DNA of 63,856 nucleotides, the filler included, from Octopus bimaculoides (lineage: Eukaryota), in the NCBI RefSeq assembly GCF_001194135.2. It is 4 parts of 4 records of this genome, joined end to end, with 100 filler letters (N's around TTAATTAATTAA, not from the genome) between each part and the next. Parts side by side here need not be neighbours in the genome. Positions count along the whole stretch, not along the records: positions 42,294 to 60,925 come from NC_069002.1; 3 more parts are not named here. The stretch is one strand, 5' to 3'. The notes under the pieces are model-generated. The model did no database searches and was not told the origin of the DNA. It saw nothing but the letters and a program-made list of their open reading frames with translations. This document shows, piece by piece, positions 40,976 through 60,925 of the stretch (position 1 is its first letter; every line of letters starts with the position of its first letter). The translations under genes were made by a program, and so were the position numbers.

Positions 40976-42237
40976 NNNNNNNNNNNNNNNNNNNNNNNNN
41001 NNNNNNNNNNNNNNNNNNNNNNNNNNNNNNNNNNNNNNNNNNNNNNNNNNNNNNNNNNNNNNNNNNNNNNNNNNNNNNNNNNNNNNNNNNNNNNNNNNNN
41101 NNNNNNNNNNNNNNNNNNNNNNNNNNNNNNNNNNNNNNNNNNNNNNNNNNNNNNNNNNNNNNNNNNNNNNNNNNNNNNNNNNNNNNNNNNNNNNNNNNNN
41201 NNNNATATATAAAGTGGGAGGAAATAAATATTCCTACATATCAAAATTCTTTATTTATTTAATTTCTAATGAATACAAATGAGATATACCTATACTATGT
41301 TTGCATACACATGCATAAACTAAGAATATGCAAAAGAAACTAATAAATTATAGTAACTAATGAATTTATATACATAAATTATGTTTACGAAATATAGGAT
41401 TTAATATCAACAAGAATAGGAATAACAGGAAATTAAAAATCAGAAGTTTAATGATAGAAGTAAATTGAGAACAGAATGAAGTAATTAATAGAAGCAATAT
41501 TATTTGGTATGATAGATGGGAATAGATCGAAATATATAAGCATAGAACAATAATATTGGTATGCATAAGGTAGAATAGTTTTGTACATACACATACATGA
41601 TATATTAAAACAATGTCATATCAATATTGTTAGTAACTAAATATACTCGAAATTTGAATAAACATTATATATAAACAGTGAAATATATTTATCAGTGGTG
41701 TAAACACCCATTTATGTCCATCACACTTTCTCGCTCTATATAAACATTTACAATATGAACATATCATTCAGAGTACTGCCAAAATGCTGTCTGGATTTAC
41801 ATGGGATTTTAACAATTTTATTCCTTGTAAGCTGTAAATCTTCCCCGTCTAAAATATCCATACTTTGACTCGGACATGCTAACCGTCCGCTTGAATTTTC
41901 ATGAGAAACGGCTGTAAAACTTCAAATTCACCTTACCCCAATTAAATTATTCTAAATTAATTGAGATACACGTTCTGCGTTAGTTTTTATTTTATTTTTC
42001 CACTAATATAATATATACATGCTATAACGGAACCCTAACACGAATCCTTAGATCCAGTCTTAGCTGTGATCTTGGAACTTAACTGTCGACCAGCTGTAGC
42101 ACTTATCCAGTGTACCTATTCGTTTAAAATTCAAGTGAACTGAACTCCTCATACTCTCTCTCTCTCTATCTCTCTCTCTCTCTCTATCTCTCTNNNNNNN
42201 NNNNNNNNNNNNNNNNNNNNNNNNNNNNNNNNNNNNN

Positions 42238-42249
42238 TTAATTAATTAA
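42238..42249. other. Artificial TTAATTAATTAA spacer in a 100-nt gap
   Basis: 44 N + 12-mer + 44 N. Confidence 0.9.
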
Positions 42250-42639
42250 NNNNNNNNNNNNNNNNNNNNNNNNNNNNNNNNNNNNNNNNNNNNGAATATA
42301 ACGTAGCATGAATTTAGGAAGCTTAGAAAATAGAGAGGGCTCTTAATTGTAGATTTTAAATATTTGAGAGACAACAATGCATAAATCGTAATTTTTTTTT
42401 TAAAAGAGCAATGAATTCTGGGTGATTAGAATATAACGTAGCATGAATTTAGGAAGCTTAGAAAATAGAGAGGGCTCTTAATTGTAGATTTTAAATATTT
42501 GAGAGACAACAATGCATAAATCGTACAAAGTACCTAATAAAAGTCAATATTAATTCAATTTTGGGGGATTAATCGATATGAGGGTATTCTATTTCAGATA
42601 ATTCAAAAAATATGAAATTAGAAAAAGAATATCCCAACA

Positions 42640-42912
42640 CTACCAGACCTTTTGAAATCCCAATTTAAGTAAGTCTACAGGCTTAAGTAAATATATATGG
42701 GAATTAAAATCTAGAAAAAGAGAGTACACACTTAATTGGAGTATTATAGGTAGAGCCCACTCTTATAATATTGGGAATAAAATGTGTTTGTTATGCATAA
42801 CTGAATTTATGAAACTACTACAGTCTAGAGATGAATTATTAAACACATACGATGAATGAGGAGTTAACTGTAGGCACTGAAGTAAGTTTACATTTAGTAA
42901 AATGAAGTACTG
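42640..42912 (+). mobile_element. Penelope-like GIY-YIG C-terminal relic (third fragment)
   Basis: STGLSKYIWELK....YTLNWSIIGRA..Y..GNK.C.LC..E.......LLN...E....CRH..KF with in-frame stops. Confidence 0.8.
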
Positions 42913-43269
42913 AACCCCCAACCCCTGAATCAAATAACCACATAATTTTATTTCTAAAGCACTTGAATAGACTATATAAATAAATAAATAAAAATTTAAT
43001 AATGCAGTTATTTAAATTAAATATATGAATTAAATATCACTAAAATTATATAACAAATTATATATACCTCCCAATATAGGTAAATTTGAAAATAATAATA
43101 GAGGATAATTTAAAATTAAAACTATGTATAGTGTAATTACCCCACTTGGTACTAACCACCTATAAATACCCATAGTTCTCTGCTATCTTCTTCCTCTAAT
43201 CACCATTTTAGTACCAGACATTTTTATTCTGATATATAATCTTATATCTCACATTCTGTATTTGACATA

Positions 43270-43448
43270 TACTTGATTTGATAAAGAAAGGAACATGGCA
43301 AGTTCCCCTTAGAAAAACCCACAAGACTGTTCACAATGTTGAGGTCTTCACCCAGAGAAGTCTTGTAACATCTGGAACAATGCATCTAAGAATTCCACTT
43401 AGTCATTTCACTGACAACCTACAGGACTTGATCAGGACTGGCCTGGGG
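43270..43448 (-). pseudogene. Putative disrupted exon 5 of the SerRS-like gene
   Basis: After TTTAG: PQASPDQVL*VVSEMTKWNS*MHCSRCYKTSLGEDLNIV, resembling the SerRS segment P.....RVL..VG....H.E.GE.L.I as recalled; TAG at 43419-43421 and 43386-43388. Confidence 0.45.
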
Positions 43449-43479
43449 CTAAACAATGACAACAATGATGACAACTTAC

Positions 43480-43554
43480 TGTGTCTCTGTGTAGCACATT
43501 TGGTAACTTCAAACTTCGCATAATTACGGTTTCTTCCAGAATATTGAAATCAGC
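43480..43554 (-). CDS. Mitochondrial SerRS-family (SLIMP-like/SARS2-like) coding exon 4
   Basis: TTTCTTGCAG| ADFNILEETVIMRSLKLPNVLHRDT |GTAAGT; 75 nt, phase 0; contains the SerRS L.LPN..H motif. Confidence 0.88.
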
Positions 43555-43589
43555 CTGCAAGAAATAAGTAAAATAATTAAATAATTGGT

Positions 43590-44265
43590 TCAGGCATGGC
43601 TGTGTGATAAGAAGCTTACTTCCCAAACACGTGATTCTAGGTTCAGTCCCACTGTGTGGCGCCTTGGGCAAGTGTTTTCTACTGTAGACTTGAGTGAATT
43701 TGGTAGATGAAAACTGAAAGAAGCCCATTGTATATCATCATCATCATCATCATCATCATCGTTTAATGTCAGCTTTCCATGCTAGCATGGGTTGGACAAT
43801 TTGACTGAGGACTGGCAAGCCAGATGGCTGCACTAGGCTCCAATCTGATCTGGCAGAGTTTCTACAGCTGGATGCCCTTCCTAACGCCAACCACTCTGAG
43901 AGTGTAGTGGGTGCTTTAACGTGCCATTGGCACGAGGGCCAGTCACACGGTACTGGCAACAGCCACGCTCAAAATGGTGGTTTTTACGTGCCACCCGCAG
44001 AGGAGCCAGTCCAGTGATTTGTGTGTCTGTATTTGTCACTTGACAACCGATGTTGGTGTGTTTACATCCCTGTAACCTAGTGGTTCAGCAAAAGAGACCG
44101 ATACAATAAGTGCTAGGCTTACAAAGACTAAGTGCTGGGGTTGATTTGTTCAACGAAAGGCAGTGTACCAGCATGGCTGCAGTCAAATGACTGAAACAAG
44201 TAAAAGAATAAATGAATAACAAGTAAAAGAATAAATGAATAACAAGTAAAAGAATAAATGAATAA
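43590..44265 (+). mobile_element. tRNA-derived octopus-type SINE interrupted by an RTE-tailed repeat (43736-44012, - strand)
   Basis: Head GCATGGCTGTGTGATAAG..GTTCAGTCCCAC; tail with a 23-bp unit x3; inserted repeat with (CAT)n tail. Confidence 0.8.
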
Positions 44266-44269
44266 TTGG

Positions 44270-44712
44270 TAGGTTATCAGGTGACTGGCTAGCTTCCTGA
44301 AGTTGGTGTTGCAGAGCAACAAGCTATTTGCATCATAGAACTTCAGTAGCCTTATTTCCTCTTCGTTTCAGGAACCAATTCCATGGCCCCCATGTACACC
44401 ATGGAAGATACCGGGCTGCCACCTGACATGCCCATTGAAATCCCCAGCCATGAAGATGAGATCATTGTCACTCATCTTGGAGGTAGCCTGCAGAAGAATA
44501 TCATAAAAGTAGTCCTTCTGTTCATTTGGTAGGCCTGCTTGTGAGGCATAGGCAGAGATAATCGTTGCTATACTATTCTGCAAGACTAGCCTGAGCTTAA
44601 GTACTCCATCGCACACTCTGACTATCTCTATGACCTTATGGAAGTCTTCTGGTACAGAAGTGAAACAGAGCTCTATAGAAGTCTCCAGTATAATAGAAGA
44701 GATTTCTGGTAT
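44270..44712 (-). mobile_element. RTE-clade LINE apurinic endonuclease fragment
   Basis: IISAYA.QAGL....KDYFY..L......DLIFMAGDFNGHV....GVHGG.G.GSRNEE...LL.F. Confidence 0.85.
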
Positions 44713-45329
44713 NNNNNNNNNNNNNNNNNNNNNNNNNNNNNNNNNNNNNNNNNNNNNNNNNNNNNNNNNNNNNNNNNNNNNNNNNNNNNNGGAGGGGGTG
44801 GGAATGGGTGGGTGCATCATGGACAAGTAATGGCCAGCTTCGCCTCAGGAAACAGAAATAGCAGTAAGAAGACACTAGTGAGGCAGAGAGAGAGAGAGAG
44901 AGAGACTTGAAAGACTATCACTGGAGGAAATCATGACAAAAATGAGATAATAGTATTATATTGTAGTACTATATAGTAGTATTTTCTAGTGTAGTAGTAT
45001 GACGTAGTTTGAATTCAGTATTACATTTTGTCTCGGCCCATTCCTACATTCATTGAGGTATTAGTAGTAGAAAGAGCAACCGACTATAAAAACTACTCAC
45101 TGTAAAAATATACAGATATGAAAATTTGTGAAAAAAAAGCCCATCCCTCCTTTACATTTTAACAATGGAACAATTGTGCAAGTCAACAAGAAAAAGCAAA
45201 AAAAAAAGAGACATAATTAAAATAAAAATTCAATCAGTGACAGCTTTCACTTGTTGAAACATACAAGTATGCGCGCACAAACAACAAATACATACATATA
45301 AGGGTGGGTGGATAGGTAGGTAGGTAGTT

Positions 45330-45497
45330 ACACAATGTGTTTCTTTCAGTTTCAGTCTACCAAATCCACTCACAAGACTTTGGTCAGCCTGAGGCTACAG
45401 TAGAAGACATTTGTCCAATGTGTCACACAGTGGTACTGAACCCAGAACCATGTGATTGGGAAGCAAACTTCTTGCCACATAGCCATTCCTGCACCTA
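45330..45497 (-). mobile_element. SINE head fragment (family of 46005-46400)
   Basis: Reverse-complement match to the SINE 5' half. Confidence 0.75.
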
Positions 45498-46004
45498 TGC
45501 AAATTTTTTCTTAATGACTCAACAAATTCTCACTGAAATGAAAATGTTCGCATTGGGGGTGGGAGCTTTTTGGCAGAATCCAATCTGTTGCAAACATTCA
45601 AGGTACAGTCTTTGTTTCATAGACACTTCCCTCCCTCTTCCCATTTTTCTTGGTAGCTCTTAAAAAAAATGCATTATGGGTACTACTCTTCTCTTCCTTA
45701 CTAAATAGTAACCATTTTTTTTTTTTGTTCTGATATTTTTATAGTCACTCAATTGCAAAGATGTCCAATTCAGACTGACATACTCTCAAAAGTAAACCTT
45801 CTTCACTTCAGTTTAATCTTTTGAAACACAGTTAGTTAACCAGCTAGAAATAGCAATCAAATCTCTTTAGATTGGAATCCTTTAGATCGGTGTTTCTCAA
45901 CCATATTTTACCAAAGGATCCCTTAGATTCCTATTTTAGTCAGGTGGACTTCTATGGCCATTCAGTGATAATCCTATGATATTTTTATAATTAAATATTA
46001 TTAA

Positions 46005-46400
46005 GTGCAGGAGTGGCTGTGTGGTAAGTAGCTTGCTTACGAACCACATGGTTCCAGGTTCAGTCCCACTGTGTGGCACCTTGGGCAAGTGTCTTCTACT
46101 ATAGCCTCAGGCTGACCAAAGCCTTGTGAGTGGATTTGGTAGACGGAAACTGAAAGAAGCCCGTCGTATATATGTATATGTGTGTATATGTGTGTGTATC
46201 TGTGTTTGTCCCCGCAGCATCGCTTGACAACCGATGGTGGTGTGTTTACGTCCCTGTAGCTTAGCGGTTCGGCAAAAGAGACCGATAGAATAAGTACTAG
46301 GCTTACAAAGAATAAGTCCTGGGTTCGATATTTGCTCGACTAAAAGGCGGTACTCGAGCACAGCCAGTCAAATGACTGAAACAAGTAAAGGAGAGTAAAA
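46005..46400 (+). mobile_element. Full-length tRNA-derived octopus-type SINE
   Basis: GCAGGAGTGGCTGTGTGGTAAG, GTTCAGTCCC, internal microsatellite, AAGTAAA(G)GAG tail; related copies or parts at 48200-48355(-), 48388-48545(+), 54436-54797(-), 56322-56727(+), 57525-57917(-). Confidence 0.88.
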
Positions 46401-46443
46401 AGGAATTGTATTTAAAAAGTTGTTGAAATATTTTGTGTATCAA

Positions 46444-47500
46444 ACGAGGAAGAGTCAAAAATTATACACACTCTTTTGTGTAATTACATCAAAGAAACAA
46501 GAGTCATCATCATCATCATCATCATCGGAAAGCGGACGTTAAACGATGATGATGATGATGATGATGACTCTTGTTTCTTTGATGTAATTACACAAAAGCA
46601 GGGGATAGTACGTCATTTTTCTATATAGTCTCCTTCCTTTTCAATGCACTTGGACCAGCAGTCCACAAGCTTGCATGTTCCCTCCAAGAAGAAGGTTTCC
46701 AGCTGCACCACTTCCTTTACATCTTCATCCATAGGAAATTGAAAACCTTGTAAACCATCTTTGAGCAGTCCAAAGATATGATAGTTGGAAGGGGTGAGAT
46801 CTGAGCTGTAGGCAGGGTGTTCCAGCACCTCAAAAACTAATTGGTTAACGGTTTCAAGGGTCTGGGCAGTCATGTGTGGGCATGCATTGTCATGCAACAA
46901 CAAAACTTTCTTTGATAATAGGTTTTGGTGTTTAGTGCAAATTGCTGGCTTCAGTTTGTTAGCCAGCAAAGCACTGTATCTTATACTATTGATAGTACAC
47001 CCCTTTTCCAGGCAGTCTTCCTGTATAGACCCTTTTGAGTCCCAAAAAAGGGTTAGCATCACCTTTCCTGTGGAAGACTGAGTCTTAAATTTCTTTGTAA
47101 TTGGCAAGCCAGGATGTTTCCACTCCATACTCTGTCTTATGGATTCTGCCTCATAATGATGGACCTACATTTCAACTCCTGTGACTATTCTACTAAAATA
47201 TTTCTCACCTTCATTGTTGTAGTGATCGAGTAAATGTTCATAGATCTCAAGATGTTTGTGCTTGTGCTCTGCAGTAAGCTCTCTTGGCACTCATCTAGCA
47301 CAGACTTTATGGAAGCCGAGCTCATCGTGGATGATTTAATAGGCAGAACCATGACTAATCTGCAGAGAACAAGCTATCTCATCGACGATAAATCGCCGGT
47401 TCACCATTACCATCTCTTGAGCTTGCTGAATCTTCTCATCAGTGATGAGAAGATTTTTATCCAAATATTGCTTCTGGTTTCAATTGTTTTTAAGACAATT
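46444..47500 (-). mobile_element. Mariner (DD34D-type) transposase relic with one TIR
   Basis: RIVTG, KVMLTLFWDSKG, LLHDNACPH, HPAYSSDL.PSNYHIF; upstream HTH region with stops; TIR-like ACGAGGAAGAGTCAAAAA at 46444. Confidence 0.92.
46473..46598. repeat. Perfect 54-bp inverted duplication around an 18-nt retroelement tail
   Basis: Arms 46473-46526 and 46545-46598; core GGAAAGCGGACGTTAAAC. Confidence 0.9.
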
Positions 47501-47779
47501 TAGTCACGGCGATATAAAAGGAAAATGAATTGAATTAAAATAAATGAAATTCATCTTTAATAATATCAGTTATGGAAGTTCACATGTTCTTCCAGATTGA
47601 TTTCATTTATTTACAACCAGTAGCATATTTTAGTAAAAATGTCAATATTTTATTTCTCTCAAAATGTTGTCTTCTCTTTGTTTTTTTAGATGCACATTCC
47701 TGTGCACGTATACACACACAAACACACAAATACACTGTCAATGAAGTAACAACATTCTTTCAATCAAATATAAACTTAC

Positions 47780-47860
47780 ATTTAAAGTCTTTAAAAGCTG
47801 TCTCAGAGATTTCCCACGAGACTTCAGCAGCTCTTTTGATCGTTTGACATCTTCTGTTTC
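47780..47860 (-). CDS. Mitochondrial SerRS-family (SLIMP-like/SARS2-like) coding exon 3
   Basis: TGTGTTTTTAG| ETEDVKRSKELLKSRGKSLRQLLKTLN |GTAAGT; 81 nt, phase 0; second helix of the coiled-coil arm. Confidence 0.85.
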
Positions 47861-49339
47861 CTAAAAACACAAAGCAAAAAAAAAAAAGAATATGCATTTA
47901 TCTACTGTTGATGTTAGCAGTATCCTCATCATGATCATCACATTGTCTCTATTGGCTTGTGTTGGTGTGTGTAGCCCTCAAGTGTGATGTGCTTCATTTT
48001 AATATATTTCCATCCTTATACAGATCCCCTTTAATCAATATAGGCACAAGTGTATTAAAGTGTCACTCACAACTATCATGTGACATCAAGACAAAAAGAC
48101 ACAACATACAGACACACACACATATGTATTATATATAATGGGCAAATTATTTGAAAAATATGAATTATCCACATGACATTGTTATGGTTTTAAAATTCAA
48201 TCTAGTTGATGAAATTGGCCTCAGGACTTATACTTTGTAAGCCTAGTACTTATTCTATTGGTCTCTTTTGCCAAACTGCTAAGTTACAGGAATGTAGATA
48301 CAGCAACAATGGTTGTCAAGTGGTGATGGGAGGACAAACACAGACACAAAGACACACACACATTGATATATATATATATATATATAAGTGCAGGCATGGC
48401 TGTGTGGTAAAAAGCTTGCTTCCCAACCACATGGTTATGGGTTCAGTTCCACTGCATGGCACCTTGGGCAAGTGTCTTCTATAGCCTTGGGCCAACCAAA
48501 GCCTTGTGAGTGGATTTGGTAGATTGAAATAAGAAGAAGCCTGTCNNNNNNNNNNNNNNNNNNNNNNNNNNNNNNNNNNNNNNNNNNNNNNNNNNNNNNN
48601 NNNNNNNNNNNNNNNNNNNNNNNNNNNNNNNNNNNNNNNNNNNNNNNNNNNNNNNNNNNNNNNNNNNNNNNNNNNNNNNNNNNNNNNNNNNNNNNNNNNN
48701 NNNNNNNNNNNNNNNNNNNNNNNNNNNNNNNNNNNNNNNNNNNNNNNNNNNNNNNNNNNNNNNNNNNNNNNNNNNNNNNNNNNNNNNNNNNNNNNNNNNN
48801 NNNNNNNNNNNNNNNNNNNNNNNNNNNNNNNNNNNNNNNNNNNNNNNNNNNNNNNNNNNNNNNNNNNNNNNNNNNNNNNNNNNNNNNNNNNNNNNNNNNN
48901 NNNNNNNNNNNNNNNNNNNNNNNNNNNNNNNNNNNNNNNNNNNNNNNNNNNNNNNNNNNNNNNNNNNNNNNNNNNNNNNNNNNNNNNNNNNNNNNNNNNN
49001 NNNNNNNNNNNNNNNNNNNNNNNNNNNNNNNNNNNNNNNNNNNNNNNNNNNNNNNNNNNNNNNNNNNNNNNNNNNNNNNNNNNNNNNNNNNNNNNNNNNN
49101 NNNNNNNNNNNNNNNNNNNNNNNNNNNNNNNNNNNNNNNNNNNNNNNNNNNNNNNNNNNNNNNNNNNNNNNNNNNNNNNNNNNNNNNNNNNNNNNNNNNN
49201 NNNNNNNNNNNNNNNNNNNNNNNNNNNNNNNNNNNNNNNNNNNNNNNNNNNNNNNNNNNNNNNNNNNNNNNNNNNNNNNNNNNNNNNNNNNNNNNNNNNN
49301 NNNNNNNNNNNNNNNNNNNNNNNNNNNNNNNNNNATATA

Positions 49340-50470
49340 TATAATGGGTTCTGAAGATATAAAAAGCAAATGAAAAGAAAGAACCAAACTGGAGGAAGAG
49401 AATAAGAATGAAGCTGGAAAAGACAGAGAAAGAGCTGGGACAATTGAATAGGATAAAGGAGAGCTCAAGAATAAGGTAGCAATCAGAAAATGGAATGGAC
49501 AGTACAGGTTAGAAGAAAAGAGAAATCAAATGGTACATGAAGAATTCACACAAAAGGTGACAGTATTAAAGGCCAAATTGAAAAGATATGATGCTAGATG
49601 CAAAGGTTTTGAACAGAATAGACTGTGCCAATCAAATAGAAGGTGTCTATTTGAAGAAAAAGAAGGAAACCAATGTCAGGAACTGATTCCAGATGTGGAA
49701 GAAAGTAAAGAATTTTGAGGAAGGCCAGCAAAACACAAAGAAAACACAAAGTGATAAACAAACTTGGAAAGATAACTTGCAACTGTACCAAGACAAAAAA
49801 AATGCCGGAATTAACCTATATACAGTGAGACAGAAGTTTTTAAAAAATAGCAAATTGGAAAGAACCAGGCCCAGATAGAGTACAAGGCTATTGGCTGAAG
49901 AACTTTACACAGTTGGTTGAAAGGATTGTTGCCTGCAGCATGGTTACATCCCTGCCTGGATGACAAGTGGATGAACGATGCTATGCTTCAAGGAGCCCTT
50001 CGCATCAAATTTTTTACCTATAATCTGTTTACCACTAATGTAGAAGCTTATGACTGGTGTCTTAGCAGAAGAATCAATATAAAGAAACTTGACAGAGAAA
50101 CTAGGAAGTTGTTGACAATGTATGGAGCCCATTATCTGAAAGCTGATATCAACCAGTTGTACTTGAGGAGGGCCAGGGTGGAAGTGGCTTCATAGCAGTA
50201 GAAGAATGTGTACAGATGGAAAGAAAAAGTCTAGTAGAGTATTTACAGAGCAGTAAAGAAAATCTACTAATGACAGTTAATAAAGAACAGGTGATGAAGT
50301 ACATAATAGGAGAAAAGGACACGAAAGAAATACAACTTGTCAACAATAACTTGTTTTGAAGATATTTTAAAATGTGATATCCATCTCTTGGAAAAAGAAA
50401 TAAGGCTTAATATCACAAAGGGCAAGCATAGAAAAAAATAGATAAACACAAAAGAAAGGAACAAGTGAAA
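49340..50470 (+). mobile_element. Internally deleted R4/Dong-type LINE fragments
   Basis: LKAKLKRYD..C..FEQNRL, VQGYWLK.F, KLDRETRKLLTMYGAH..KAD...LYL.R; RT core missing. Confidence 0.8.
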
Positions 50471-51539
50471 GTTTTAAGATACATCTCGCAGATGCTCTAG
50501 GTTGCATCATTGCTAATGTTTCTAGGGTCCCAGGAGATTTGGGATCTTTCAGAATCAGAACCCCTTGCCCGGTTGACCCAACTTGCAGTTCAATGATGGC
50601 AGACCACTGGTCTTCCTTCTTCACCTAAAGCCATTTACTAGCCTTTGAATAAAATATCACCTCAACTACTGCAGAGCGGAATCTCGCTCTAAAGTTCATA
50701 TGCACTTAGCATTTCTTACAATCACTACCACCGCTTTTGTTTTCTTACTTTACCCTCTATCTATATGACAGGAGTGTGAAACACACAGCATTTTATTATG
50801 TAAGATATGGAGAAATATATGTCACCACACACACAAAGAAATATACACCACACAAATATGCGCACGCACACACACATACACACGAAGAAATATGCACCAT
50901 ACACACACATGTGGAAAGATACATCAGTACATATATATTACACATGTGGTTGCTTAGTTAAGAAATAGTTTACAATTGAATTGTTCATGTTCAGTCCACT
51001 GCACGACAACACCTCTCCACCACAGAATGCTTTGAGATTGTTTATTCAAACTCAAAAGTTAAGTCAATTACAATAAACTGGTGAAAATAATCATCTATGT
51101 ATTTCTGTATTTCAATTTAAAATAGAAAGTTTATCAAATCAAGATTTGATCACAGAGCAAAGCTGATGACTTAGGTTTCAGAAAAATTCAGATGAAGAAA
51201 CCTAAGAGGAGTTAATGACAGCAAAATCTAATAAACATCCTCTTTAAAGATAATTAGTAGTCATAAAATATCTATTAAATGTGACCTTGAATTTAAGAGT
51301 TTCTAATTTAAGAAGTCAGGAGCTACTGTAACCTATTTAGATTAAAAAAAAAAAAAAGAGAAGAAAGCAAACAACTGGATAACATTATCAAATGTTATAA
51401 GCTGACGATAGGTTTTAAATGATAAAGTTGACAAATGAAAACAGCAACCCACAGAGATAAAAGGCGAAGCTGACTTCACTAGGATTTGATCTTAGAATGT
51501 ATAGAGTCAAAAGAAATACTGCAATAGAGATTCTGCAAG

Positions 51540-52120
51540 ATGCAGTACCAGGCAGTGACTCTCATGGCTTCTGATCTTAAATGAGTGGAAGTGTTATCAT
51601 GTACATATTTTGTCTTGGTATAAAAGGTGGGCTACAGTAAATATTCTGCTCAATACTGCAGATTTTCTTGTCGATTGCTTGACCATAACCAGTTGAGCAT
51701 GTCCCTCAGTGGCTGATGATATGTGCATCTCTGATCATGAGCAGGAGAAGTGGGGGAGCATCATAGCCATGTGTTGAGAGGAATTCTTTAGGATTTGAAT
51801 AATTCACCTCTAGAAACACGGGTGTTTCATTCATCATCCTTAAACAAACCTAATTCGGGGACCTTTGGAGTGGGATGGGCTACTCAACCGGAAGAAAATT
51901 CTAACTAGGTCCCACCTGCAAGGTCATGTGCTGTTTATCTTGATCTGAAATCACCATGTCATGCACATGTGGTTGTGACTCATGTACATAGTGTACCTTT
52001 ATCAGACAGGTAGTCATGATAGGTATATTAGGCTTCATATATTTGTATCTCAGTGTCACTTTGATGTCATGCATCATTCTCTCACCCAATAATAATAATA
52101 ATAATAATAACAACAACAAT
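51540..52120 (+). mobile_element. Unclassified interspersed repeat ending in (AAT)n
   Basis: Higher-GC segment with (AAT)n tail; recognised only as a recurrent octopus-like repeat. Confidence 0.4.
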
Positions 52121-52129
52121 AATGGTTTC

Positions 52130-52320
52130 AAATTTAGGTACAAGTTCAGTAATTTTAGGAGAGGTGATAAGTTGATTGCACTGACCTTAGAGTTCAACTG
52201 ATACTTATTTTATAGACTACAAAAGGATGAAAGGCAAAGTCAACCGCAGAACGTAAAGACAGACGAAATGCCACTAAGCATTTTGCCTGGCATGCTGACA
52301 ATTATGCCAACTCACTGCCT
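52130..52320 (-). mobile_element. SINE (family of 17850) inside an (AAT)n tract
   Basis: GGATGAAAGGCAAAGTC..GACGAAATGCCACTAAGCATTTTGCCTGG, with (AAT)n on both sides. Confidence 0.8.
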
Positions 52321-52439
52321 TAATAATAATAATAATAATAACAATGATAATAGAAAGAGTAGAAGGTAACCCAAAACCTCCACTGGCTACTATGCCGTAA
52401 GTACGGACATGAGGTTATATGTCAAATATAAATTTATGA

Positions 52440-52750
52440 AATAACAGCGTGAGTAAGGCAGGAACTGATAACAGTGAAGATCTCTCACCTGGCAGGTGGT
52501 CTACTGCACAGCAGAGTAGGCCTGGCTGTCATCTAGCTATTGTGGTATGAAAGAGAGGAGGAAGAGAGATCGACTGGATCAGGCTGAATGCAACTGTGAT
52601 GGAATGTTACATGCAAAGTGAACCTAGCAGACTTGGCTATATGGACAGAATGATAGAGATATAACTTGAAAAGGGAATGTTTGATGTTACTCGACAGAGA
52701 CTAAGCAATCAAGTAATAGACAGATAAAGAAGAAAAGGTTATATTACATA
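52440..52750 (+). mobile_element. R4/Dong-type LINE N-terminal fragment
   Basis: W...NATVMECY..SEPSR.GYM.RM.....EKGMFDVT.QRL.NQ, homologous to ~11170-11330. Confidence 0.7.
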
Positions 52751-52779
52751 GGCCAGAACAAACTTTCTGCTCCACCCAA

Positions 52780-53072
52780 TCATCATCATCATCATCGTTT
52801 AACGTCCGCTTTCCATGCTAGCATGGGTTGGATGATTTGACTGAGGACTGGTGGACCAGGTGGCTACACCAGGCTCCACTCTGATTTGGCAGAGTTTCTA
52901 CAGCTGGATGCCCTTCCTAATGTCAACCACTCCGAGAGTGTAGTGGGTGCTTTTACGTGCCACTGGCATGAAGGCCAGTCAGGCGGTACTGGCAACAGCC
53001 ATGCTCAAAATGGTGTATTTTACGTGCCATGCTCAAAATGGTGTATGTTACGTGCCACCTGCACAGGAGCCA
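52780..53072 (-). mobile_element. RTE-tailed short interspersed repeat with (GAT)n tail
   Basis: CATCATCGTTTAACGTCCGCTTTCCATGCTAGCATGG..GGATGCCCTTCCTAA; relatives at 43736, 53360, 55560(+), 57115, 58520. Confidence 0.8.
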
Positions 53073-56000
53073 GTCCATACACTACTTTGCATGAAAACTC
53101 ATTTTACTAGAAGGTACAGAAATAATTGCTTTAATGTGTACATCAATCTTAGACAACTTAATATATAATTACTAATTACATATAAACCATGGTAAATGTA
53201 GCAATTAACACTGGGGGAAAAACAGATGAATGTTATTAGAGATTGTTTCTATATGTTGGTAAACATAATGTCTATCGGGGAAATTGTCATTATTTCTGGT
53301 TCGCTTTGTTACTTTTTGGTTTCATTGACTTATATTTAATAAAGATACAATGAACCTTCATCATCATCATCATTTTAAAGTCCACTTTTCCATTCTTGCA
53401 TGGGTCAGATGGGGTTTATTGAGGCAGATTTTCTATGGATGGATGCCCTTCCTGTCACCAATCCTTACCTGTTTCTAAGCAAGGTAAATGACAAAACGTT
53501 TGCACAATATGAAGACAAGGATGGACGCACACATACACGTAAACACGCACACATATACATATATAAAATGACCTTCTTTATTTAATCACAGAGAAGAATC
53601 TTTAATTCTATTAATTAATTATTTTATTATCTTTTTTTTAAAAATCATACTTTGGTAGGGCTTCTACTGAGTGTCCTGAGTGTTTTTTTTTTTGTGGCAC
53701 AACCACTTGTGAGGTTGTAGGACCCTTCCTCCCTCTTTGAGCAAGAGGCGGAGTCCTACAGTCGAAAGGGCAGCCACTTCAGTCTACCAGGGTGGGGACA
53801 GGTTTCTATGTCTACTACATATTACACAGCATTGGATGGGGTGTGATAGGTGTGAAGTGGGAAGGAGAGATAAAGATGTGGGGGGATGAGGTGTCAGTGT
53901 GGACCCTAAGAAGAGAACAGGAAGGTAGGTGGGGCTACATAGGTAGCAGTTGCAGGAATTTATGGAGGTGGGGAACGGGTAGTATGGTGGGAATATACTG
54001 AAGATGAAGACAGGTTGAAGATGGTGGGAGTGACAAAAAGGATGGCAGTGGGGTAATGAACAAGGGTTGAAGATGGGTGTGATTGATGAAGGGGATAGCT
54101 GATGAACAGGGGTTGGAGGGAAGGGGTGATGGAAAGGGTCGGGTGGGGTGGTGATGAACAAGGATTATATATTTTGGTACTCTATTTTCAATGCTGAGTA
54201 CTCTGTTCTTTCATGTACACTGAAGTTCTAGGCATCCATACAGCGAATTTGATGGTATAAAAAACTCTTAAACATATTAGAGACTCCCAAATTTCAGCAG
54301 CAGATATTCAAGAAAAAAAAAAAAATTAGTGCATTAAATCATGAAATATTTAAAGCAAATTCACATATTGGACTTGGGGTGATTTTTCTGAAACATTTTC
54401 TGGGAAAGAAAGTTCATCTTACACNNNNNNNNNNTATCACCTTTAGTCGAGCAAATGGACCCCAGGACTTATTCTTTGGAAGCCTAGTACTTATTCTATC
54501 CGTCTCTTTGCCGAACCGCTAAGTTACGGGGACGTAAGCACACCATTATCGGTTGTCAAGCGATGCTGGGGGGACAAACACAGACACACAAACATATACA
54601 CACACACATACATATATATATATACATATATACGACAGGCTTCTTTCAGTTTCCGTCTACCAAATCCACTCACAAGGCTTTGGTCAGCCCGAGGCTATAG
54701 TAGAAGACACTTGCCCAAGGTTTCACGCAGTGGGAATGAACCCAGAGCCATGTGGTTAGTAAGCAAGCTACTTACCACATAGCCACTCCTGCGCCTATAG
54801 TTTATTTTTGTTTCAGTAACTGATAACATAAGGTAAAACAGTAAAAGGATGGAAATGTTCTTCATTTTTATTGTTGTTCCCTGTTAATGTTTGTAAGTGG
54901 GTCGATTTTTAACATGGTTTCTTCAAAAACAAAGTGATGTCACGCGACTGCTCTTTCTGCCATGACTCACTATCCTACTTTTAGTCACCTACGTAGATGT
55001 TTGTTACTAATCAAAAGATGCTGGTTAGTTTATCCACCCAAAGATGGAGTAGGACGATATCACACTGCATGGGAAGAAAGAAAAGGAAAGAAGGAAAGAA
55101 GGAAAAAAATACAAACAAAAATGAGAAAAGAAAATAGAGAAACGATAATGTGAAAAAAAAAAGGAAAAAGGAAGTAAGCAAAACATAAAGAGAGAGAGAG
55201 GAAGAGATAAAATGAAAGACAAATAGAGACAGAAAGAGAAAGGCAGAAAAATAAAAACCCAAAGGGCAAACAGCAGGGTATTAGATTGATGATCTAATGC
55301 CAAGTGCCAAACATAACTCATAAGGCTGGATAGAAAAGTTGACCCAGCAATTATAATTATAAAAATGAATTCAGAAATGTGGTCATCATTTATAATTAAC
55401 TAATTTATTACTAATAGATCTTTTTCTCTTTTTTTTTTCTTTCAATTAAGTCATTAGCCCTTTAGCATTTAAACCTGCCAAATATGGCCCAAATATTCAA
55501 ACTGGCCAGGTCTGGCCTATCACTCCTACACTACATGAAGGCTGATCTTAAGACACTATGTTTTATGAAGGAGATGACAAAGCACCAAGATATCTTGGCA
55601 CATTGCTGTACTCAAGGAAACTTAACCACCACAGCAAAACTGCTACTGGTGCTGATACCATATAAAAAGCACCGAATACACTCTGTAGAGTGGTTGACAT
55701 TAGAAAGGGCATCCGGCTGTAGAAATCATGCCAAAATAGAGCTTGGTGAAATATCACCAAGCATTTCACCTGGCGTGCTAATAATTATGCCAGCTGGCCA
55801 ATAATAGCAATAACAAATCACAAGCACCTTTATGCACTTATTCAACGTGCCAGTAACAACAGCCAAATCTCCCTTGATGCACAAAGTACCATCTTAATGA
55901 AACAAAAAGACACTGGATAATGTAATCCAAAATACACTATGCCTAAAAATATGATGGGGTGGTCATGGCAGGAATGCCTTTGAATATAGGATTTCTTGAA

Positions 56001-56741
56001 CAGGGCTAACCTTGGGTTAACAATGTCAGAAGCAGCATTATTAACAACAGCAAAAGGAGCTTCTATGTGGTCAGTCAACCAGCTAGAAATAACAGCCAAA
56101 TTTACTCCAAATCACACTCAATCATTTTAAAGAGAAAATGAGAACACATTGGGTAATGCAACTGAGGGTACACTATGCCTAGAACAAAAATTTAAAAAGT
56201 ACGGTTGGTCACAACTGAAATGTTTTTGATCATAAATCTGATCCACCAGGGTTTACTTGGGGATGAACAACAACAACAGCAACAAAAATAAAAGTATTAT
56301 AGGCATAGGCATGGCTGTGAGGTAAGCAGTTTGCTTCCCAACCACATGGCTTTGAGTTCAATTCTATTGTGTGGCACCTTGGACGAGTGACTTTTTCTAC
56401 AGCCCTGGGCCAACCAAAGCCTAGTGAATAGAATTGGTAGATGGAAACTGAAAGAAGTCTGTCGTGTGTATATACACGTGCATGTGCGCGTGTGTGTGTG
56501 TGCTTTTGTGTTTATGTCAGTAGCCCACTCCCAACTGTTTGACAACAGGTGTTGGTTTGCTTATATCCCTGTAACTTAGCAGTTCAGCAAAGGAGACTGA
56601 AAGACTAAGTACCAAACTCTAAAAAGAAGAAATATCAAGTACCAGGATCAATTTGTTTGACTAAAATCCCTTGAAGGCAGTGCAGTAGCATGGCCACAGT
56701 TCAATGACTGAAACAGGTAAAAGATAAGATTCCAGACTCAC

Positions 56742-56846
56742 TTTTACTTTGCTCAAAGCAGCCATCATGCTTGCAATATTTTTTCTTTCTTCTTCTAGTT
56801 TCTTTTTGTTCAACTTTAATTTCATCAACCACTTGTAATCCTCCAC
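56742..56846 (-). CDS. Mitochondrial SerRS-family (SLIMP-like/SARS2-like) coding exon 2
   Basis: TTTTCAATATCAG| VEDYKWLMKLKLNKKKLEEERKNIASMMAALSKVK |GTGAGT; 105 nt, phase 0; coiled-coil character. Confidence 0.85.
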
Positions 56847-57011
56847 CTGATATTGAAAAGAAAAACAAAAAAACATGCACCCGAATTAATTAATACAGAA
56901 TAATTTACATATTTTAGACAAGAAATTAAAAGATATAATTAATAGTTTTGATGTCAACCTGCCTGAGACTGTCCTTGTATCTATGATACAAACTTCCAAT
57001 AGTAAAGTGAT

Positions 57012-57700
57012 TAAAATTACCCCTTTAGCATTTAAACCAGCTACCATATTCTAATGTGTATAAGGAACCCTTCTTTATCAAAAATTAGGTTAAAAAGATA
57101 TGGGAATTTCTCATACATCATCATCATCATCGTTTAACATCCGCTTTCCATGCTAGCATGGGTTGGATGATTTGACTGAGGACTGGTGAAACCAGATGGC
57201 TACACCAGGCTCCAATCTGATTTGGCAGAGTTTCTACAGCTGGACGCCCTTCCTAACACCAATACATGGATAGCATTATAATCCTTTACAAAACCTTTTT
57301 CCAAATTCTAAGCCCCCGCAAATTAGGGGGGTTCCTTATACACATTAAAAATATGGTATATCCAACCCAAATAGCCTAGCTGTTTTATATTCAAACTGTC
57401 AGAACCTGGCCTCTTACACCTACCCTACAATGTCATTCTAAAAATAAACAATCTCATCATCGAAACCACAAAGCTACGAAATAATGCATGATTAATTCAA
57501 AACAATGTGAATAAATATTACTCTTTTACTTGTTTCAGTCATTTGACTGCGGCCATGCTGGAGAACTGCCTTTAGTCGAGCAAATCAACCCCAGGACTTA
57601 TTCTATCGGGCTCTTTTTGCCGAACTGCTAAGTTACGGGGACGTAAACAGACCAGCATCAGTTGTCAAGCGATGGTGGGGGGACAAACACAGACACACAA

Positions 57701-57753
<53 letters not shown>

Positions 57754-57953
57754 CAACGGGCTTCTTTCAGTTTCTGTCTACCAAATCCACTCACAAGGCT
57801 TTGGCCGGCCCGAGGTTATAGTAGAAGACACTTGCCCAAGGTGCCACGCAGTGGGACTGAACCCGGAACCATGTGGTTGGTAGGCAAGCTACTTACCACA
57901 CAGCCACTCCTGCGCCTATACATGACAGAAATAATCTGAATGCTAAAGGATTA
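57012..57953. mobile_element. piggyBac-like MITE containing a nested TIR MITE (57042-57358), an RTE-tailed repeat and a SINE
   Basis: Ends CCCTTTAGCATT...AATGCTAAAGGATTAA; uninterrupted copy at 59884-60112; inner TIR TACCATATT..TGTGTATAAGGAACCC. Confidence 0.75.
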
Positions 57954-58879
57954 AAGCCTTCCATCAAAATTTCATTTTAATTTATGATCCAAACACCAGC
58001 TTAATTATGACAAAGTTATACCATTAAATTCTTCATTATTTTCAAAATGAATTGAAACAAAGGAAGTGAATTTTTACCAATATATGGTAACAAAAAGGTT
58101 AAAGTGATCCAAATTAAAACCGTCCATAAAAATTTCATGTTAATTTAGGTACCAAAAACCAGTTTAATAATTACAACGTTATCTTAGATTTTGGCTGCTA
58201 TTTTTATTATAGCCTCCTCTGACTCACTTAAAGCCATCATGGGTAATTACACTTCCTATCACATCATTAATTGGCCTCTGTTCCACAGAGCTGACTGGTC
58301 ACATAGTAACTATCCCACCCCAACGCCCAATCCCACACTGACCACTGTGTTCTGTCCTTTCTCTGTATTACATCATCCCTCTGGAATCTTTTTTATGTTT
58401 ATGTCTTTCTTGCAGGTGCTTACTTGTAACAATTTAAACACAACATTAACAGCATCAACTCCACTAGTCTTGGAGGGCCTACAAAGGTCATGGACACTGC
58501 CGCTTCCTTCAGACTTCTTCATCCTTTTCTTTTTTCATCATTTCCATGCTGTCATGGGTTGAACGTTTTAACACAACCCAACAAGTCAGAAGACCACATG
58601 TCTTAATCTAGTGTTTCTGTTTAGGCACAGTTTCTATGGCTGGATGCCCTTCCTAACACCAACCACTTTATAGAGTGTGCTGGAGACTTTTTCAGGGCAC
58701 CAGCACTAGTGAGGTTGCCTTGTAACTTGCAAACCCATAGAGCCCCTTTGCCTGAGACGGAGAACAGAAGATAGAGTAATCACTTTAAGTGAGGTGTTGA
58801 TGATGAGAGGGGCAAGAACAGATTTAGTGTTAGGAGGAACCAATACCTCTTTGGTAAATTCATTGCCATGCTTTTTTAG

Positions 58880-59266
58880 GTGGAGGCGCAATGGCCCAGT
58901 GGTTAGGGCAGCGGACTCGCTGTCATAGGATCGCGGTTTCGATTCCCAGACCAGGCATTGTGAGTGTTTATTGAGCGAAAACACCTAAAGCTCCACGAGG
59001 CTCCAGCAGGGGATGGTGGCGAACCCTGCTGTACTCTTCCACCACAACTTTCTCTCACTCTTACTTCCTGTTTCTGTTCTGCCTGTAATTCAAAGGGCCA
59101 GCCTTGTCACACTGTGCCACGCTGAATATCCCCGAGAACTACGTTAAGGGTACACGTGTCTGTGGAGTGCTCAGCCACTTGCACGCTAATTTCACGAGCA
59201 GGCTGTTCCGTTGATCGGATCAACTGGAACCCTCGATGTTGTAAGCAATGGAGTGCCAACAACAAT
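58880..59266 (+). mobile_element. tRNA-derived SINE, paralogue of 32800-33180
   Basis: Box A/B intact; ATGCTTTT direct repeat on both sides. Confidence 0.85.
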
Positions 59267-59385
59267 GCTTTTAAACTGCAAAGTAATTACATTGTTGAAT
59301 ATTATTTCAAGTTTTTATTCATTGAATAAACACATCACCTTTTATTAACAGTCAATAAATGTGTAACATCTAAGCCATAACCTAC

Positions 59386-59712
59386 CAATTCTTCAATATC
59401 CATTTTCTCAATATTCCGCACTGCTACATTGGATTTCAGTTCATCTAGGTTTTGCAATTTTTCAGCCAAATTCAAAGCAACATTTACAGCAGGAGTACGA
59501 CTTTCAACAGAGCGATTCACATAGAGAGCAGACTCTGAAAGGAACCGAACAGGCTTAAGTCCACAATACCAAAATTTTCTGACATCATCAGTATGCTGTG
59601 GACTGGAACCATCCAACAGCTTGTTCCTTGGTGATAATGTTGTGCAGTGGTAAAAAATTCTTGACTTCTGATTCAGTAGAAGTTTTTGAGTTGATAGTCT
59701 GAATGCTGCCAT
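59386..59712 (-). CDS. Mitochondrial SerRS-family (SLIMP-like/SARS2-like) first coding exon
   Basis: MAAFRLSTQKLLLNQKSR.. is basic and acid-free (targeting-peptide-like); SALYV...L.L.E...N.DEL..NV..RN...DIEEL; donor G|GTAGGT; 327 nt, phase 0; upstream acceptor TTTTACAG at ~59859. Confidence 0.85.
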
Positions 59713-59883
59713 TTCATAAAAGAAAGTGCTTTTGGTATCAATACAATGAAAGATGACAATATTTGTTCACTACTAGCTGGGATCACTGTCAGGGATTGTA
59801 TTCATCCAGGAGGTAAATGCAGATAATCAGCTTGTAATTCCCTTGAAAAGACTTCATACTGTAAAATAAGGAAATAAAAGTGT

Positions 59884-60112
59884 TTAACCTTTTAGCATTC
59901 AAACTGGCCATATCCGGCCAAAATATTTTACTTGTTCAATGTTCAAATTGACCAGATCAGACCTCTTACACTTACCCTACAATGTCATTTTAAAAAACAA
60001 ACAATCACATCATCAATATCTGAAAACAACAAGATAATTCATTTATTAATTAAAAATAATGTCAATAAATAATCGTTGGAATTGACAGAATAATCTGAAT
60101 GCTGAATAGTTA
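59884..60112. mobile_element. piggyBac-like MITE
   Basis: TTAACCTTTTAGCATT...AATGCTGAATAGTTAA, with TTAA at both ends. Confidence 0.7.
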
Positions 60113-60559
60113 AAAAAAAACTAAAAACAATGTTTATTTTTTGTTTTTTTAGTTTTTACAATTACAGTTTCTTTCTTTTTTGTTACTCTTGGGCTCTCAA
60201 CCCATCAATGAGTTTCAGGTCTTTCTAACAAATACGGGTTCATCACCAATTTTCTGGCACCCTGGTTCCAGACCTATAATGAATTATCCATAAGACAAGT
60301 AATAATAATTCGGGATAATTCCTAGAAGACTGCTGCTGCCATGCTAATGACTTTTTTGCTACTCAACCTTCACAACACTCCTTAGTTTATTCATTAGACA
60401 CATGATGCTAAGTTTGAAACATTCTTCCAACTATAATAATATGAAGGCACAAATATAAAAATTAAAAACCACCTAACTTGCCCTTTTCATCATATTAGAT
60501 TTAGTTTTACAAAATTAAATATTGAAAAAAATGCATTTGGCCAAATTTGGACATATGAC

Positions 60560-60925
60560 AATTTAACATAGCCAAAACCCTCCCTGGCGAAGAATGTACA
60601 CCCCAACACAGATTAGTAGTCAGCGACTTCGAGATCAAGGCAATATGGGTGCCCAGAAGTAGACCGGCTTGGAGGAGAAGGGTATGGAAGCTTAAAGAGC
60701 CTGCAAATGGACAGAGACTTAGAGACAAGTTACTTGAGGCATTTGACGAAATAGAAGGGGATATAGCATCATACAACGTAGAAGACAATTGGAGATTTCT
60801 GCGGGACAACCTGTTGAGAGCCACCGACCAGATCTGTGGCTGGTGTAAAGTCCCCTCTCGACCCAGAGTAACGTGGTGGTGGAACAAGGAGATAGAGGGG
60901 GCTATTAGACAAAAGAAACAGGCTT
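60560..60925 (+). mobile_element. RTE-clade LINE fragment (end of APE plus linker)
   Basis: PGEECTPQHRLVVSDF..RRVWKLK..W..LRD.LL.A...ICG......TWWWN.EI..AI..KK.A. Confidence 0.85.

What the first reader, a model, noticed from the sequence alone, without database searches (positions are those of the whole stretch)
43480..59712. SLIMP-like seryl-tRNA synthetase paralogue in a probable cephalopod
Seen: four phase-0 exons with canonical splice sites give 196 aa: a targeting-like leader, a coiled-coil arm and LKLPNVLH. Known: SLIMP is a catalytically inactive mitochondrial SerRS paralogue described mainly from insects and a few other invertebrates. Inference from recalled sequences: SALYV and GKSLR match Drosophila SLIMP (SALYI, GKSLR) better than human SARS2 (NLLYE, GREIR). 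No catalytic-domain exon was found in the ~43 kb of window downstream, so this may be an arm-only, truncated product or the exons are lost at the 42194-42293 join.
Basis: partly seen in the sequence, partly recalled or inferred. Interest (0 to 1): 0.7.

Follow-up and report, generated by a model that had tools for sequence, protein, structure and literature searches.

The report
First four exons of octopus SLIMP
This stretch holds the first four exons of the already annotated and published Octopus bimaculoides SLIMP gene (the inactive, tRNA-binding partner of the mitochondrial seryl-tRNA synthetase); the rest of the gene lies beyond the edge of the piece, so the finding is real but ordinary.

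Summary
On the minus strand, four phase-0 exons with AG/GT sites (59712-59386, 56846-56742, 47860-47780, 43554-43480) splice to 196 aa. That peptide is identical to residues 1-196 of RefSeq XP_052831740.1, [quoted passage not shown] (503 aa). The piece is 100% identical to chromosome CM046622.1 of assembly GCA_001194135.2.

All three assembly gaps lie inside introns. The gap-free O. sinensis orthologue has the same 16 exons with identical lengths, so the gaps hide no exon.

The SLIMP reading is right:
- The arm and the conserved tRNA-binding arginine (R164) are kept.
- The full-length protein has lost the catalytic TxE and fRxE residues.
- All 40 aligned relatives recruited by the arm lack the RAE motif; 12 of 15 clusters checked include a Slimp-named member.
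- De Potter et al. 2023 (NAR) already list this protein as Octopus_bimaculoides_SLIMP, beside a separate arm-less, catalytically intact SerRS2-alpha.

The "arm-only or truncated product" idea is wrong. Exons 5-16 exist, and exon 5 starts 6.2 kb past the piece's edge.

Nothing is new here: the gene is known, annotated and published.

The parts
59386..59712 (-). Coding exon 1 of SLIMP (aa 1-109). ATG at 59712-59710. It encodes a basic, acid-free leader (aa 1-33), a low-confidence linker, the conserved SALY motif (aa 61-64), two short N-terminal helices (aa 82-85 and 89-98) and the start of arm helix 1.
   Evidence: The leader has 6 K+R and 0 D+E in aa 1-33. AF2 pLDDT is below 50 for aa 10-56. 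S61 and L63 are invariant in the 9-sequence alignment A1; L63 is also nearly invariant across 40 relatives.
56742..56846 (-). Coding exon 2 (aa 110-144): most of the outgoing helix of the coiled-coil arm.
   Evidence: The AF2 helix spans aa 106-141. It aligns to the arm of bovine and human mitochondrial SerRS.
47780..47860 (-). Coding exon 3 (aa 145-171): the tip and returning helix of the arm. It includes RGKSLRQ, with R164 (codon AGA at 47803-47801) aligned to human SerRS2 R146 and Drosophila SLIMP R123, the tRNA T-arm-recognising arginine.
43480..43554 (-). Coding exon 4 (aa 172-196): the end of the returning arm helix and the LKLPNVLHRDT junction motif that leads into the class II core.
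   Evidence: P189 is invariant and L186 nearly invariant across 40 relatives; N190 is invariant in the 9-sequence alignment A1.
56847..59385 (-). Intron 1 (2539 nt, no gap). It contains a 390-bp interspersed repeat.
47861..56741 (-). Intron 2 (8881 nt as assembled), holding the assembly gaps 54425-54434 and 48546-49334. It is made up of transposon and SINE-like debris, with no coding exon.
43555..47779 (-). Intron 3 (4225 nt as assembled), holding the gap 44713-44790 and a decayed mariner-type transposase.
42294..43479 (-). First 1186 nt of intron 4, cut off by the piece's edge. The next coding exon (PSDEVKILQETVLEK...) is not in it.

Best explanation
The window piece holds the 5' third (coding exons 1-4 of 16) of the Octopus bimaculoides SLIMP gene. 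SLIMP is the catalytically dead paralogue of mitochondrial seryl-tRNA synthetase.

The 196 aa encoded here comprise:
- a probable mitochondrial presequence;
- a short N-terminal helical segment;
- the complete antiparallel coiled-coil arm that binds tRNA-Ser.

By analogy with the Drosophila enzyme, the full 503-aa protein would enter mitochondria and pair with the arm-less but catalytically intact SerRS2-alpha. It would supply the only tRNA-binding arm, including R164. The heterodimer would then have a single working site and would charge mt-tRNA-Ser in the SerRS2-alpha pocket.

Shown here: the gene model, its identity with the annotated protein, the retained arm and arginine, the lost catalytic residues, and conservation under purifying selection.

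Inferred from the literature and not tested in octopus: mitochondrial import, heterodimer formation, the tRNA-positioning role, and any LON-linked moonlighting function.
For: Identity and gene structure:
- The spliced peptide equals residues 1-196 of P0001.
- P0001 is XP_052831740.1, [quoted passage not shown]. Orthologues are named Slimp in O. sinensis and O. vulgaris.
- The piece is 100% identical to GCA_001194135.2 CM046622.1.
- There are 16 AG/GT coding exons over 69.7 kb, with exons 1-4 at the window coordinates given.
- The gap-free O. sinensis locus has the same 16 exon lengths.

Family placement:
- The closest solved proteins are mitochondrial SerRS, by sequence (arm alone E=2e-4; full length E=2e-28) and by fold (1WLE, TM 0.73-0.81).
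- Pfam finds tRNA-synt_2b at 43.5 bits and a weak Seryl_tRNA_N hit that covers the whole arm.
- AF2 gives two long helices, aa 106-141 and 147-185, at pLDDT above 90.
- R164 aligns with human R146, which the paper shows is essential, as is Drosophila SLIMP R123.

Loss of catalysis:
- GTAEV becomes GVSPM, CYRAET becomes CYHPVV, and RVHHF becomes NTSQT.
- The 47 proteins recruited by the arm peptide are the relatives. Forty were aligned, and none has the RAE motif.
- Of the 15 clusters whose names were checked, 12 include a member from a mollusc or nemertean (Octopus, Patella, Lottia, Solemya; Haliotis, Littorina, Pomacea, Mytilus, Potamilus, Lineus, Tubulanus). NCBI's Slimp name appears in seven of these 11 genera; the other four are unnamed, hypothetical or 'serine--tRNA ligase-like'. 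The remaining three clusters hold only unnamed Logan or ENA sequences.

Published record:
- De Potter et al. 2023 (PMC10570016) list Octopus_bimaculoides_SLIMP with the same residues and numbering (..NILE = 178).
- They also list a separate Octopus SerRS2 with TSEM and RAEI and no arm.

Selection: dN/dS against O. sinensis is 0.32 for the whole CDS and 0.37 for exons 1-4.
Against: - Nothing in the window itself shows catalytic loss, because those residues are encoded outside the piece. From the window alone, the SLIMP assignment rests on identity to the annotated protein.
- The Pfam arm hit is below the gathering score (18.5 against 28.2 bits).
- No octopus experiment exists for localisation, heterodimerisation or aminoacylation.
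- My own search for the octopus SerRS2-alpha returned only cephalopod-like fragments (91% identity). Its presence in O. bimaculoides therefore rests on the paper.
Confidence: 0.95

Rival explanations
1. It is the canonical, catalytically active mitochondrial SerRS (a SARS2 orthologue) that works as a homodimer, and the only mitochondrial SerRS gene in octopus.
For: The best PDB matches are vertebrate mitochondrial SerRS. An older NCBI name was "serine--tRNA ligase, mitochondrial-like".
Against: The serine- and adenylate-binding residues are replaced: TAE by VSP, RAE by HPV, RVHHF by NTSQT. The published alignment shows a second octopus gene with intact TSEM and RAEI and no arm. Cephalopod fragments of that second gene exist. 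NCBI's current name is Slimp.
Confidence: 0.02
2. It is an arm-only, truncated product or a decaying pseudogene whose catalytic exons have been lost.
For: No further coding exon lies in the 1.2 kb of the piece downstream of exon 4.
Against: Exons 5-16 are present and uninterrupted in the same chromosome, starting 6.2 kb past the piece's edge. O. sinensis has the same 16-exon structure. dN/dS is 0.30 for exons 5-16. Probably mRNA-derived contigs (about 2-2.6 kb) of a related 522-aa protein encode the full length.
Confidence: 0.02
3. The four exons are chance open frames in repeat-rich intronic or intergenic DNA.
For: The piece is full of transposon debris with many short ORFs.
Against: The peptide is exactly identical to an annotated protein. 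The exons are conserved in length and position in O. sinensis. There are 47 significant homologues, down to E=7e-117.
Confidence: 0.01

Closest known systems
Octopus bimaculoides Slimp, RefSeq XP_052831740.1 (formerly XP_014775376.1), row 'Octopus_bimaculoides_SLIMP' in de Potter et al. 2023, NAR 51:10001, Suppl. Fig. S2
   Same: Identical over all 196 residues encoded in the window. The genomic sequence is also the same.
   Different: Nothing differs. The window simply holds only exons 1-4 of 16.
Drosophila melanogaster SLIMP (Guitart et al. 2010, as cited in the 2023 paper; Picchioni et al. 2019; de Potter et al. 2023)
   Same: It derives from mitochondrial SerRS, keeps the coiled-coil arm with the GKSLR arginine, has lost the catalytic pocket, and coexists with an arm-less SerRS2-alpha.
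   Different: The sequences are highly diverged. Heterodimer formation, the requirement for aminoacylation, and the LON and cell-cycle roles are shown only in the fly. The octopus gene has 16 coding exons spread over about 70 kb.
Vertebrate mitochondrial SerRS (SARS2; PDB 1WLE, 7TZB, 7U2A/B)
   Same: The overall fold is the same (TM 0.73-0.81). The arm geometry and the LKLPN...H junction motif are shared, and R146 is equivalent to R164.
   Different: SARS2 is an active homodimer with intact TxE and fRxE motifs. The octopus protein has these replaced. Sequence identity is about 22%.

Membership tests
SLIMP (SerRS2-derived, catalytically inactive subunit of the invertebrate mitochondrial SerRS heterodimer) | It belongs to the mitochondrial SerRS lineage, not the cytosolic one. 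| tested here: met
   The top PDB matches by sequence and by fold are bovine and human mitochondrial SerRS; cytosolic and bacterial enzymes score far lower. The published tree places it in the SLIMP clade.
SLIMP (SerRS2-derived, catalytically inactive subunit of the invertebrate mitochondrial SerRS heterodimer) | The N-terminal coiled-coil arm is retained, with the conserved tRNA-recognising arginine (Dm R123 / Hs R146). | tested here: met
   The arm is encoded in the window. AF2 gives helices at aa 106-141 and 147-185 with pLDDT above 90. R164 in RGKSLRQ aligns with human R146 and with the Drosophila GKSLR.
SLIMP (SerRS2-derived, catalytically inactive subunit of the invertebrate mitochondrial SerRS heterodimer) | The catalytic pocket has collapsed: the TxE and motif 2 fRxE residues are lost. 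| tested here: met
   Met for the full-length protein, in residues encoded outside the window. GVSPM stands for GTAEV, CYHPVV for CYRAET and NTSQT for RVHHF. It cannot be tested on the window's 196 aa alone.
SLIMP (SerRS2-derived, catalytically inactive subunit of the invertebrate mitochondrial SerRS heterodimer) | A separate SerRS2-alpha gene, with an intact active site and no coiled coil, exists in the same genome. | tested here: inconclusive
   The published alignment has the row Octopus_bimaculoides_SerRS2 with TSEM and RAEI and an arm deletion. My own search found only 148-164-aa cephalopod-like fragments, with up to 91% identity. The full O. bimaculoides protein was not retrieved.
SLIMP (SerRS2-derived, catalytically inactive subunit of the invertebrate mitochondrial SerRS heterodimer) | Mitochondrial localisation. 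| not testable with these tools
   The only evidence is a presequence-like leader: aa 1-33 have 6 K+R, no D/E and 6 S+T. A short helix spans aa 2-15, followed by a disordered stretch.
SLIMP (SerRS2-derived, catalytically inactive subunit of the invertebrate mitochondrial SerRS heterodimer) | It forms an obligate heterodimer with SerRS2-alpha that is required for mt-tRNA-Ser aminoacylation. | not testable with these tools
   This is shown only for Drosophila.
Canonical mitochondrial SerRS (SARS2/SerRS2) | The class II active site is intact (TxE serine binding, motif 2 fRxE). | tested here: not met

The most novel reading that the evidence does not exclude
Besides the full-length mRNA, octopus may make a minor isoform from this 5' region. 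It could arise by termination in the long intron 4, or by use of the unannotated in-frame 90-nt candidate exon at 43361-43272 (AG/GT, phase 0, TSLGEDLNIVNSLVG...). The result would be a free tRNA-binding arm or an insert-bearing SLIMP variant. I found no evidence for this. It is simply not excluded without transcript data.
Probability: 0.03. Interest if true: 0.35.

Novelty: already known. Interest (0 to 1): 0.08.

Why it matters
It matters little as a discovery. The gene is annotated as Slimp in RefSeq for three Octopus species, and this exact protein was used in the 2023 study that established SLIMP/SerRS2-alpha heterodimers as widespread in invertebrates.

The case is still a clean illustration of that asymmetric division of labour. 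The part in the window is the part SLIMP kept (the tRNA-binding arm), and the degenerate part lies downstream.

Its practical value is as a check on the scan. The truncation idea was an artefact of the window being pieced together.

Tried and rejected
1. I first guessed a fifth exon at 43361-43272 (TSLGEDLNIVNSLVGFSKGNLPCSFLYQIK; AG/GT, phase 0), because it loosely resembles VGDESQARVLHMVG of SARS2.
   - Rejected. The real exon 5 (PSDEVKILQETVLEK) lies outside the piece.
   - No orthologue or transcript-like relative carries such an insert.
   - My first query also carried one spurious extra V at the exon 1/2 junction. I corrected this.
2. The word-indexed protein search with the peptide gave no hit at E<=1. 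The exhaustive HMMER search then found the protein.
3. An exact look-up of the exon-1 ORF read through to its intronic stop (125 aa) was not on record, as expected for a spliced gene.
4. The search for octopus SerRS2-alpha, using a query taken from the paper's machine-read alignment, gave only fragments.
5. The Drosophila SALYI motif could not be checked. The N-terminal alignment blocks are missing from the held supplement text.
6. Rfam, tRNA and tandem-repeat scans of the piece found nothing relevant.
7. Pfam gave no hit for the LINE-like ORF fragments at 44368-44712, 49917-50195 and 60649-60924.
Full report
**What is in the sequence**

Only 42294-60925 of the window is real sequence. The feature lies on the minus strand.

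Reading the DNA and translating it gives four coding exons:
- E1 59712-59386 (109 aa)
- E2 56846-56742 (35 aa)
- E3 47860-47780 (27 aa)
- E4 43554-43480 (25 aa)

All are in phase 0. Every internal boundary has an AG acceptor behind a pyrimidine-rich tract and a GT donor. In-frame stops lie upstream of the ATG.

**Assembly gaps**

- Gaps 54425-54434 and 48546-49334 are in intron 2, and gap 44713-44790 is in intron 3. No exon edge is closer than 686 bp to a gap.
- The public assembly carries the same N runs, so that assembly cannot show continuity.
- I fetched the orthologous locus of O. sinensis, which has no N at all. An exact spliced mapping of its protein gives 16 exons. Their lengths match the O. 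bimaculoides exons one for one (327, 105, 81, 75, 46, 67, 142, 36, 85, 78, 53, 107, 94, 87, 75, 54 nt).
- A 522-aa relative found only on about 2-2.6 kb contigs, probably mRNA-derived, aligns across the E2/E3 and E3/E4 junctions without an insertion.

The gaps hide no coding exon. Only the intron lengths are uncertain.

**Identity**

- The exhaustive HMMER search with the peptide found 47 proteins. The best is P0001: 503 aa, E=7e-117, 99% identity. The single mismatch was a spurious extra V in my query.
- The corrected 196-aa peptide equals P0001 residues 1-196 exactly.
- P0001 is XP_052831740.1, [quoted passage not shown], formerly "serine--tRNA ligase, mitochondrial-like". It clusters with Slimp of O. 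sinensis and O. vulgaris.
- Its gene lies on CM046622.1 of GCA_001194135.2. The window piece is 100% identical to that locus (L001 8788-27419).
- The gene has 16 coding exons over 69.7 kb. Exons 1-4 are the ones in the window. Exon 5 (PSDEVKILQETVLEK) starts at L001 33629, which is 6.2 kb past the piece's edge.

**What kind of protein it is**

- With the arm alone, the only significant solved relatives are bovine and human mitochondrial SerRS (E=2e-4 to 2e-3).
- With the full length, they are again the best by sequence (E=2e-28) and by fold (1WLE, TM 0.73-0.81; AF2 model pLDDT 84).
- Pfam gives tRNA-synt_2b above threshold. It also gives a sub-threshold Seryl_tRNA_N hit that spans the whole arm.
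- In the model, aa 106-141 and 147-185 form the two long helices of the arm. That is essentially exons 2-4. Residues 10-56 are disordered.
- Residues 1-33 carry six K/R and no acidic residue, as expected of a mitochondrial presequence. That reading is an inference.

**SLIMP or SerRS2**

De Potter et al. 2023 (PMC10570016) report the following:
- SLIMP arose by duplication of SerRS2 at the root of Bilateria.
- It is kept in molluscs, annelids, arthropods, echinoderms and others.
- In all SLIMP-bearing species SLIMP keeps the coiled coil but loses the catalytic pocket, while SerRS2-alpha keeps the pocket but loses the coiled coil.
- The arm arginine (human R146, fly R123) is essential for charging.

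Their Supplementary Figure S2 contains the row Octopus_bimaculoides_SLIMP, with the same residues and numbering as the window peptide (..NADFNILE = 178, then ETVIMRSLKLPNVLHRDT PSDEVK...). It also contains a separate Octopus_bimaculoides_SerRS2 row with an arm deletion.

At the catalytic positions:

| Protein | TxE position | fRxE position |
|---|---|---|
| Octopus SLIMP | VSPM | HPVV |
| Octopus SerRS2-alpha | TSEM | RAEI |
| Vertebrate SerRS2 | TAEV | RAET |

In the window, R164 (AGA, 47803-47801) aligns with human R146.

As an independent check I looked at the relatives recruited by the window-encoded arm alone:
- None of the 40 aligned relatives has the RAE motif.
- I checked the names of 15 clusters. 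Twelve include a mollusc or nemertean member (Octopus, Patella, Lottia, Solemya; Haliotis, Littorina, Pomacea, Mytilus, Potamilus, Lineus, Tubulanus). NCBI's Slimp name appears in seven of these 11 genera. The other three clusters carry no name.

My attempt to retrieve the octopus SerRS2-alpha returned only cephalopod-like fragments. These have a short pre-LPN region and up to 91% identity. That criterion therefore rests mainly on the paper.

**Selection**

Against O. sinensis, dN/dS is 0.32 over the CDS, 0.37 for exons 1-4 and 0.30 for exons 5-16. The gene is functional and moderately fast-evolving, as reported for SLIMP.

**Mechanism**

The steps below are inferred from the fly work and not tested in octopus:
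1. The protein is imported into mitochondria.
2. It dimerises through its degenerate class II core with SerRS2-alpha.
3. It presents the only coiled-coil arm, which docks the T-arm and elbow of mt-tRNA-Ser through R164 and neighbouring residues.
4. The acceptor end then reaches the single active site in SerRS2-alpha.

**Verdict**

The truncation hypothesis is wrong. Nothing is new: this is a known, annotated and published gene.

The remaining DNA of the piece is intronic transposon debris with no RNA genes.

Noticed in passing
window 46613-47128 (-), with broken ORFs at 47165-47464 (-): A decayed mariner-type transposase lies in intron 3 on the same strand as the gene. Pfam Transposase_1 scores E=2.5e-10, with an LLHDNACPH motif. 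The upstream ORF pieces are separated by stops.
   Followed up: partly
window 58875-59265; further copies at L001 42756-43140, 47464-47796, 52828-53195, 58732-59117, 63460-63844: A roughly 390-bp interspersed repeat sits in intron 1. At least five more copies, 90-93% identical and in both orientations, lie in other introns of the same gene. This suggests a fairly young octopus repeat family.
   Followed up: no
window 57518-57920, 54440-54799, 46007-46400; partial copy at 48390-48545 next to the large gap: A SINE-like repeat of about 350-400 bp carries an internal (TA)n/(CA)n-type microsatellite, which produces the recurring [11 protein letters not shown] and FQFPSTKSTHKALV pseudo-ORFs. Copies are 81-88% identical. 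One copy abuts the 789-N gap and may be why the assembly broke there.
   Followed up: no
window 43272-43361 (-): An unannotated 90-nt segment in intron 4 has an AG acceptor, a GT donor and an open phase-0 frame (TSLGEDLNIVNSLVGFSKGNLPCSFLYQIK). It is not used in any orthologue or annotated isoform, so it is probably chance.
   Followed up: partly
window 42294-42390 and 42429-42525: Two 97-bp direct repeat copies, spaced 135 bp apart, lie at the very edge of the piece (read).
   Followed up: no
L001 vs L002 (O. bimaculoides vs O. sinensis SLIMP loci): Exon lengths are identical but intron lengths differ widely:
- intron 2: 8881 vs 10783 nt
- intron 3: 4225 vs 7075 nt
- intron 4: 7395 vs 3667 nt
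- last intron: about 27 kb vs 24.7 kb

L001 still contains 18991 N.
   Followed up: partly
P0049 (O. vulgaris Slimp, CAI9739086.1): The annotated O. vulgaris protein is 497 aa and lacks six residues (GKCYHP) at the position of the degenerate motif 2. This is probably a splice-site choice in the annotation rather than a real deletion.
   Followed up: no
window 44368-44712 (-), 49530-50195 (+), 60649-60925 (+): These ORF fragments look like LINE endonuclease or reverse-transcriptase remnants (for example LIFMAGDFNGHV and KLLTMYGAHYLKADINQLYL). None gave a Pfam hit at E<=0.01.
   Followed up: partly
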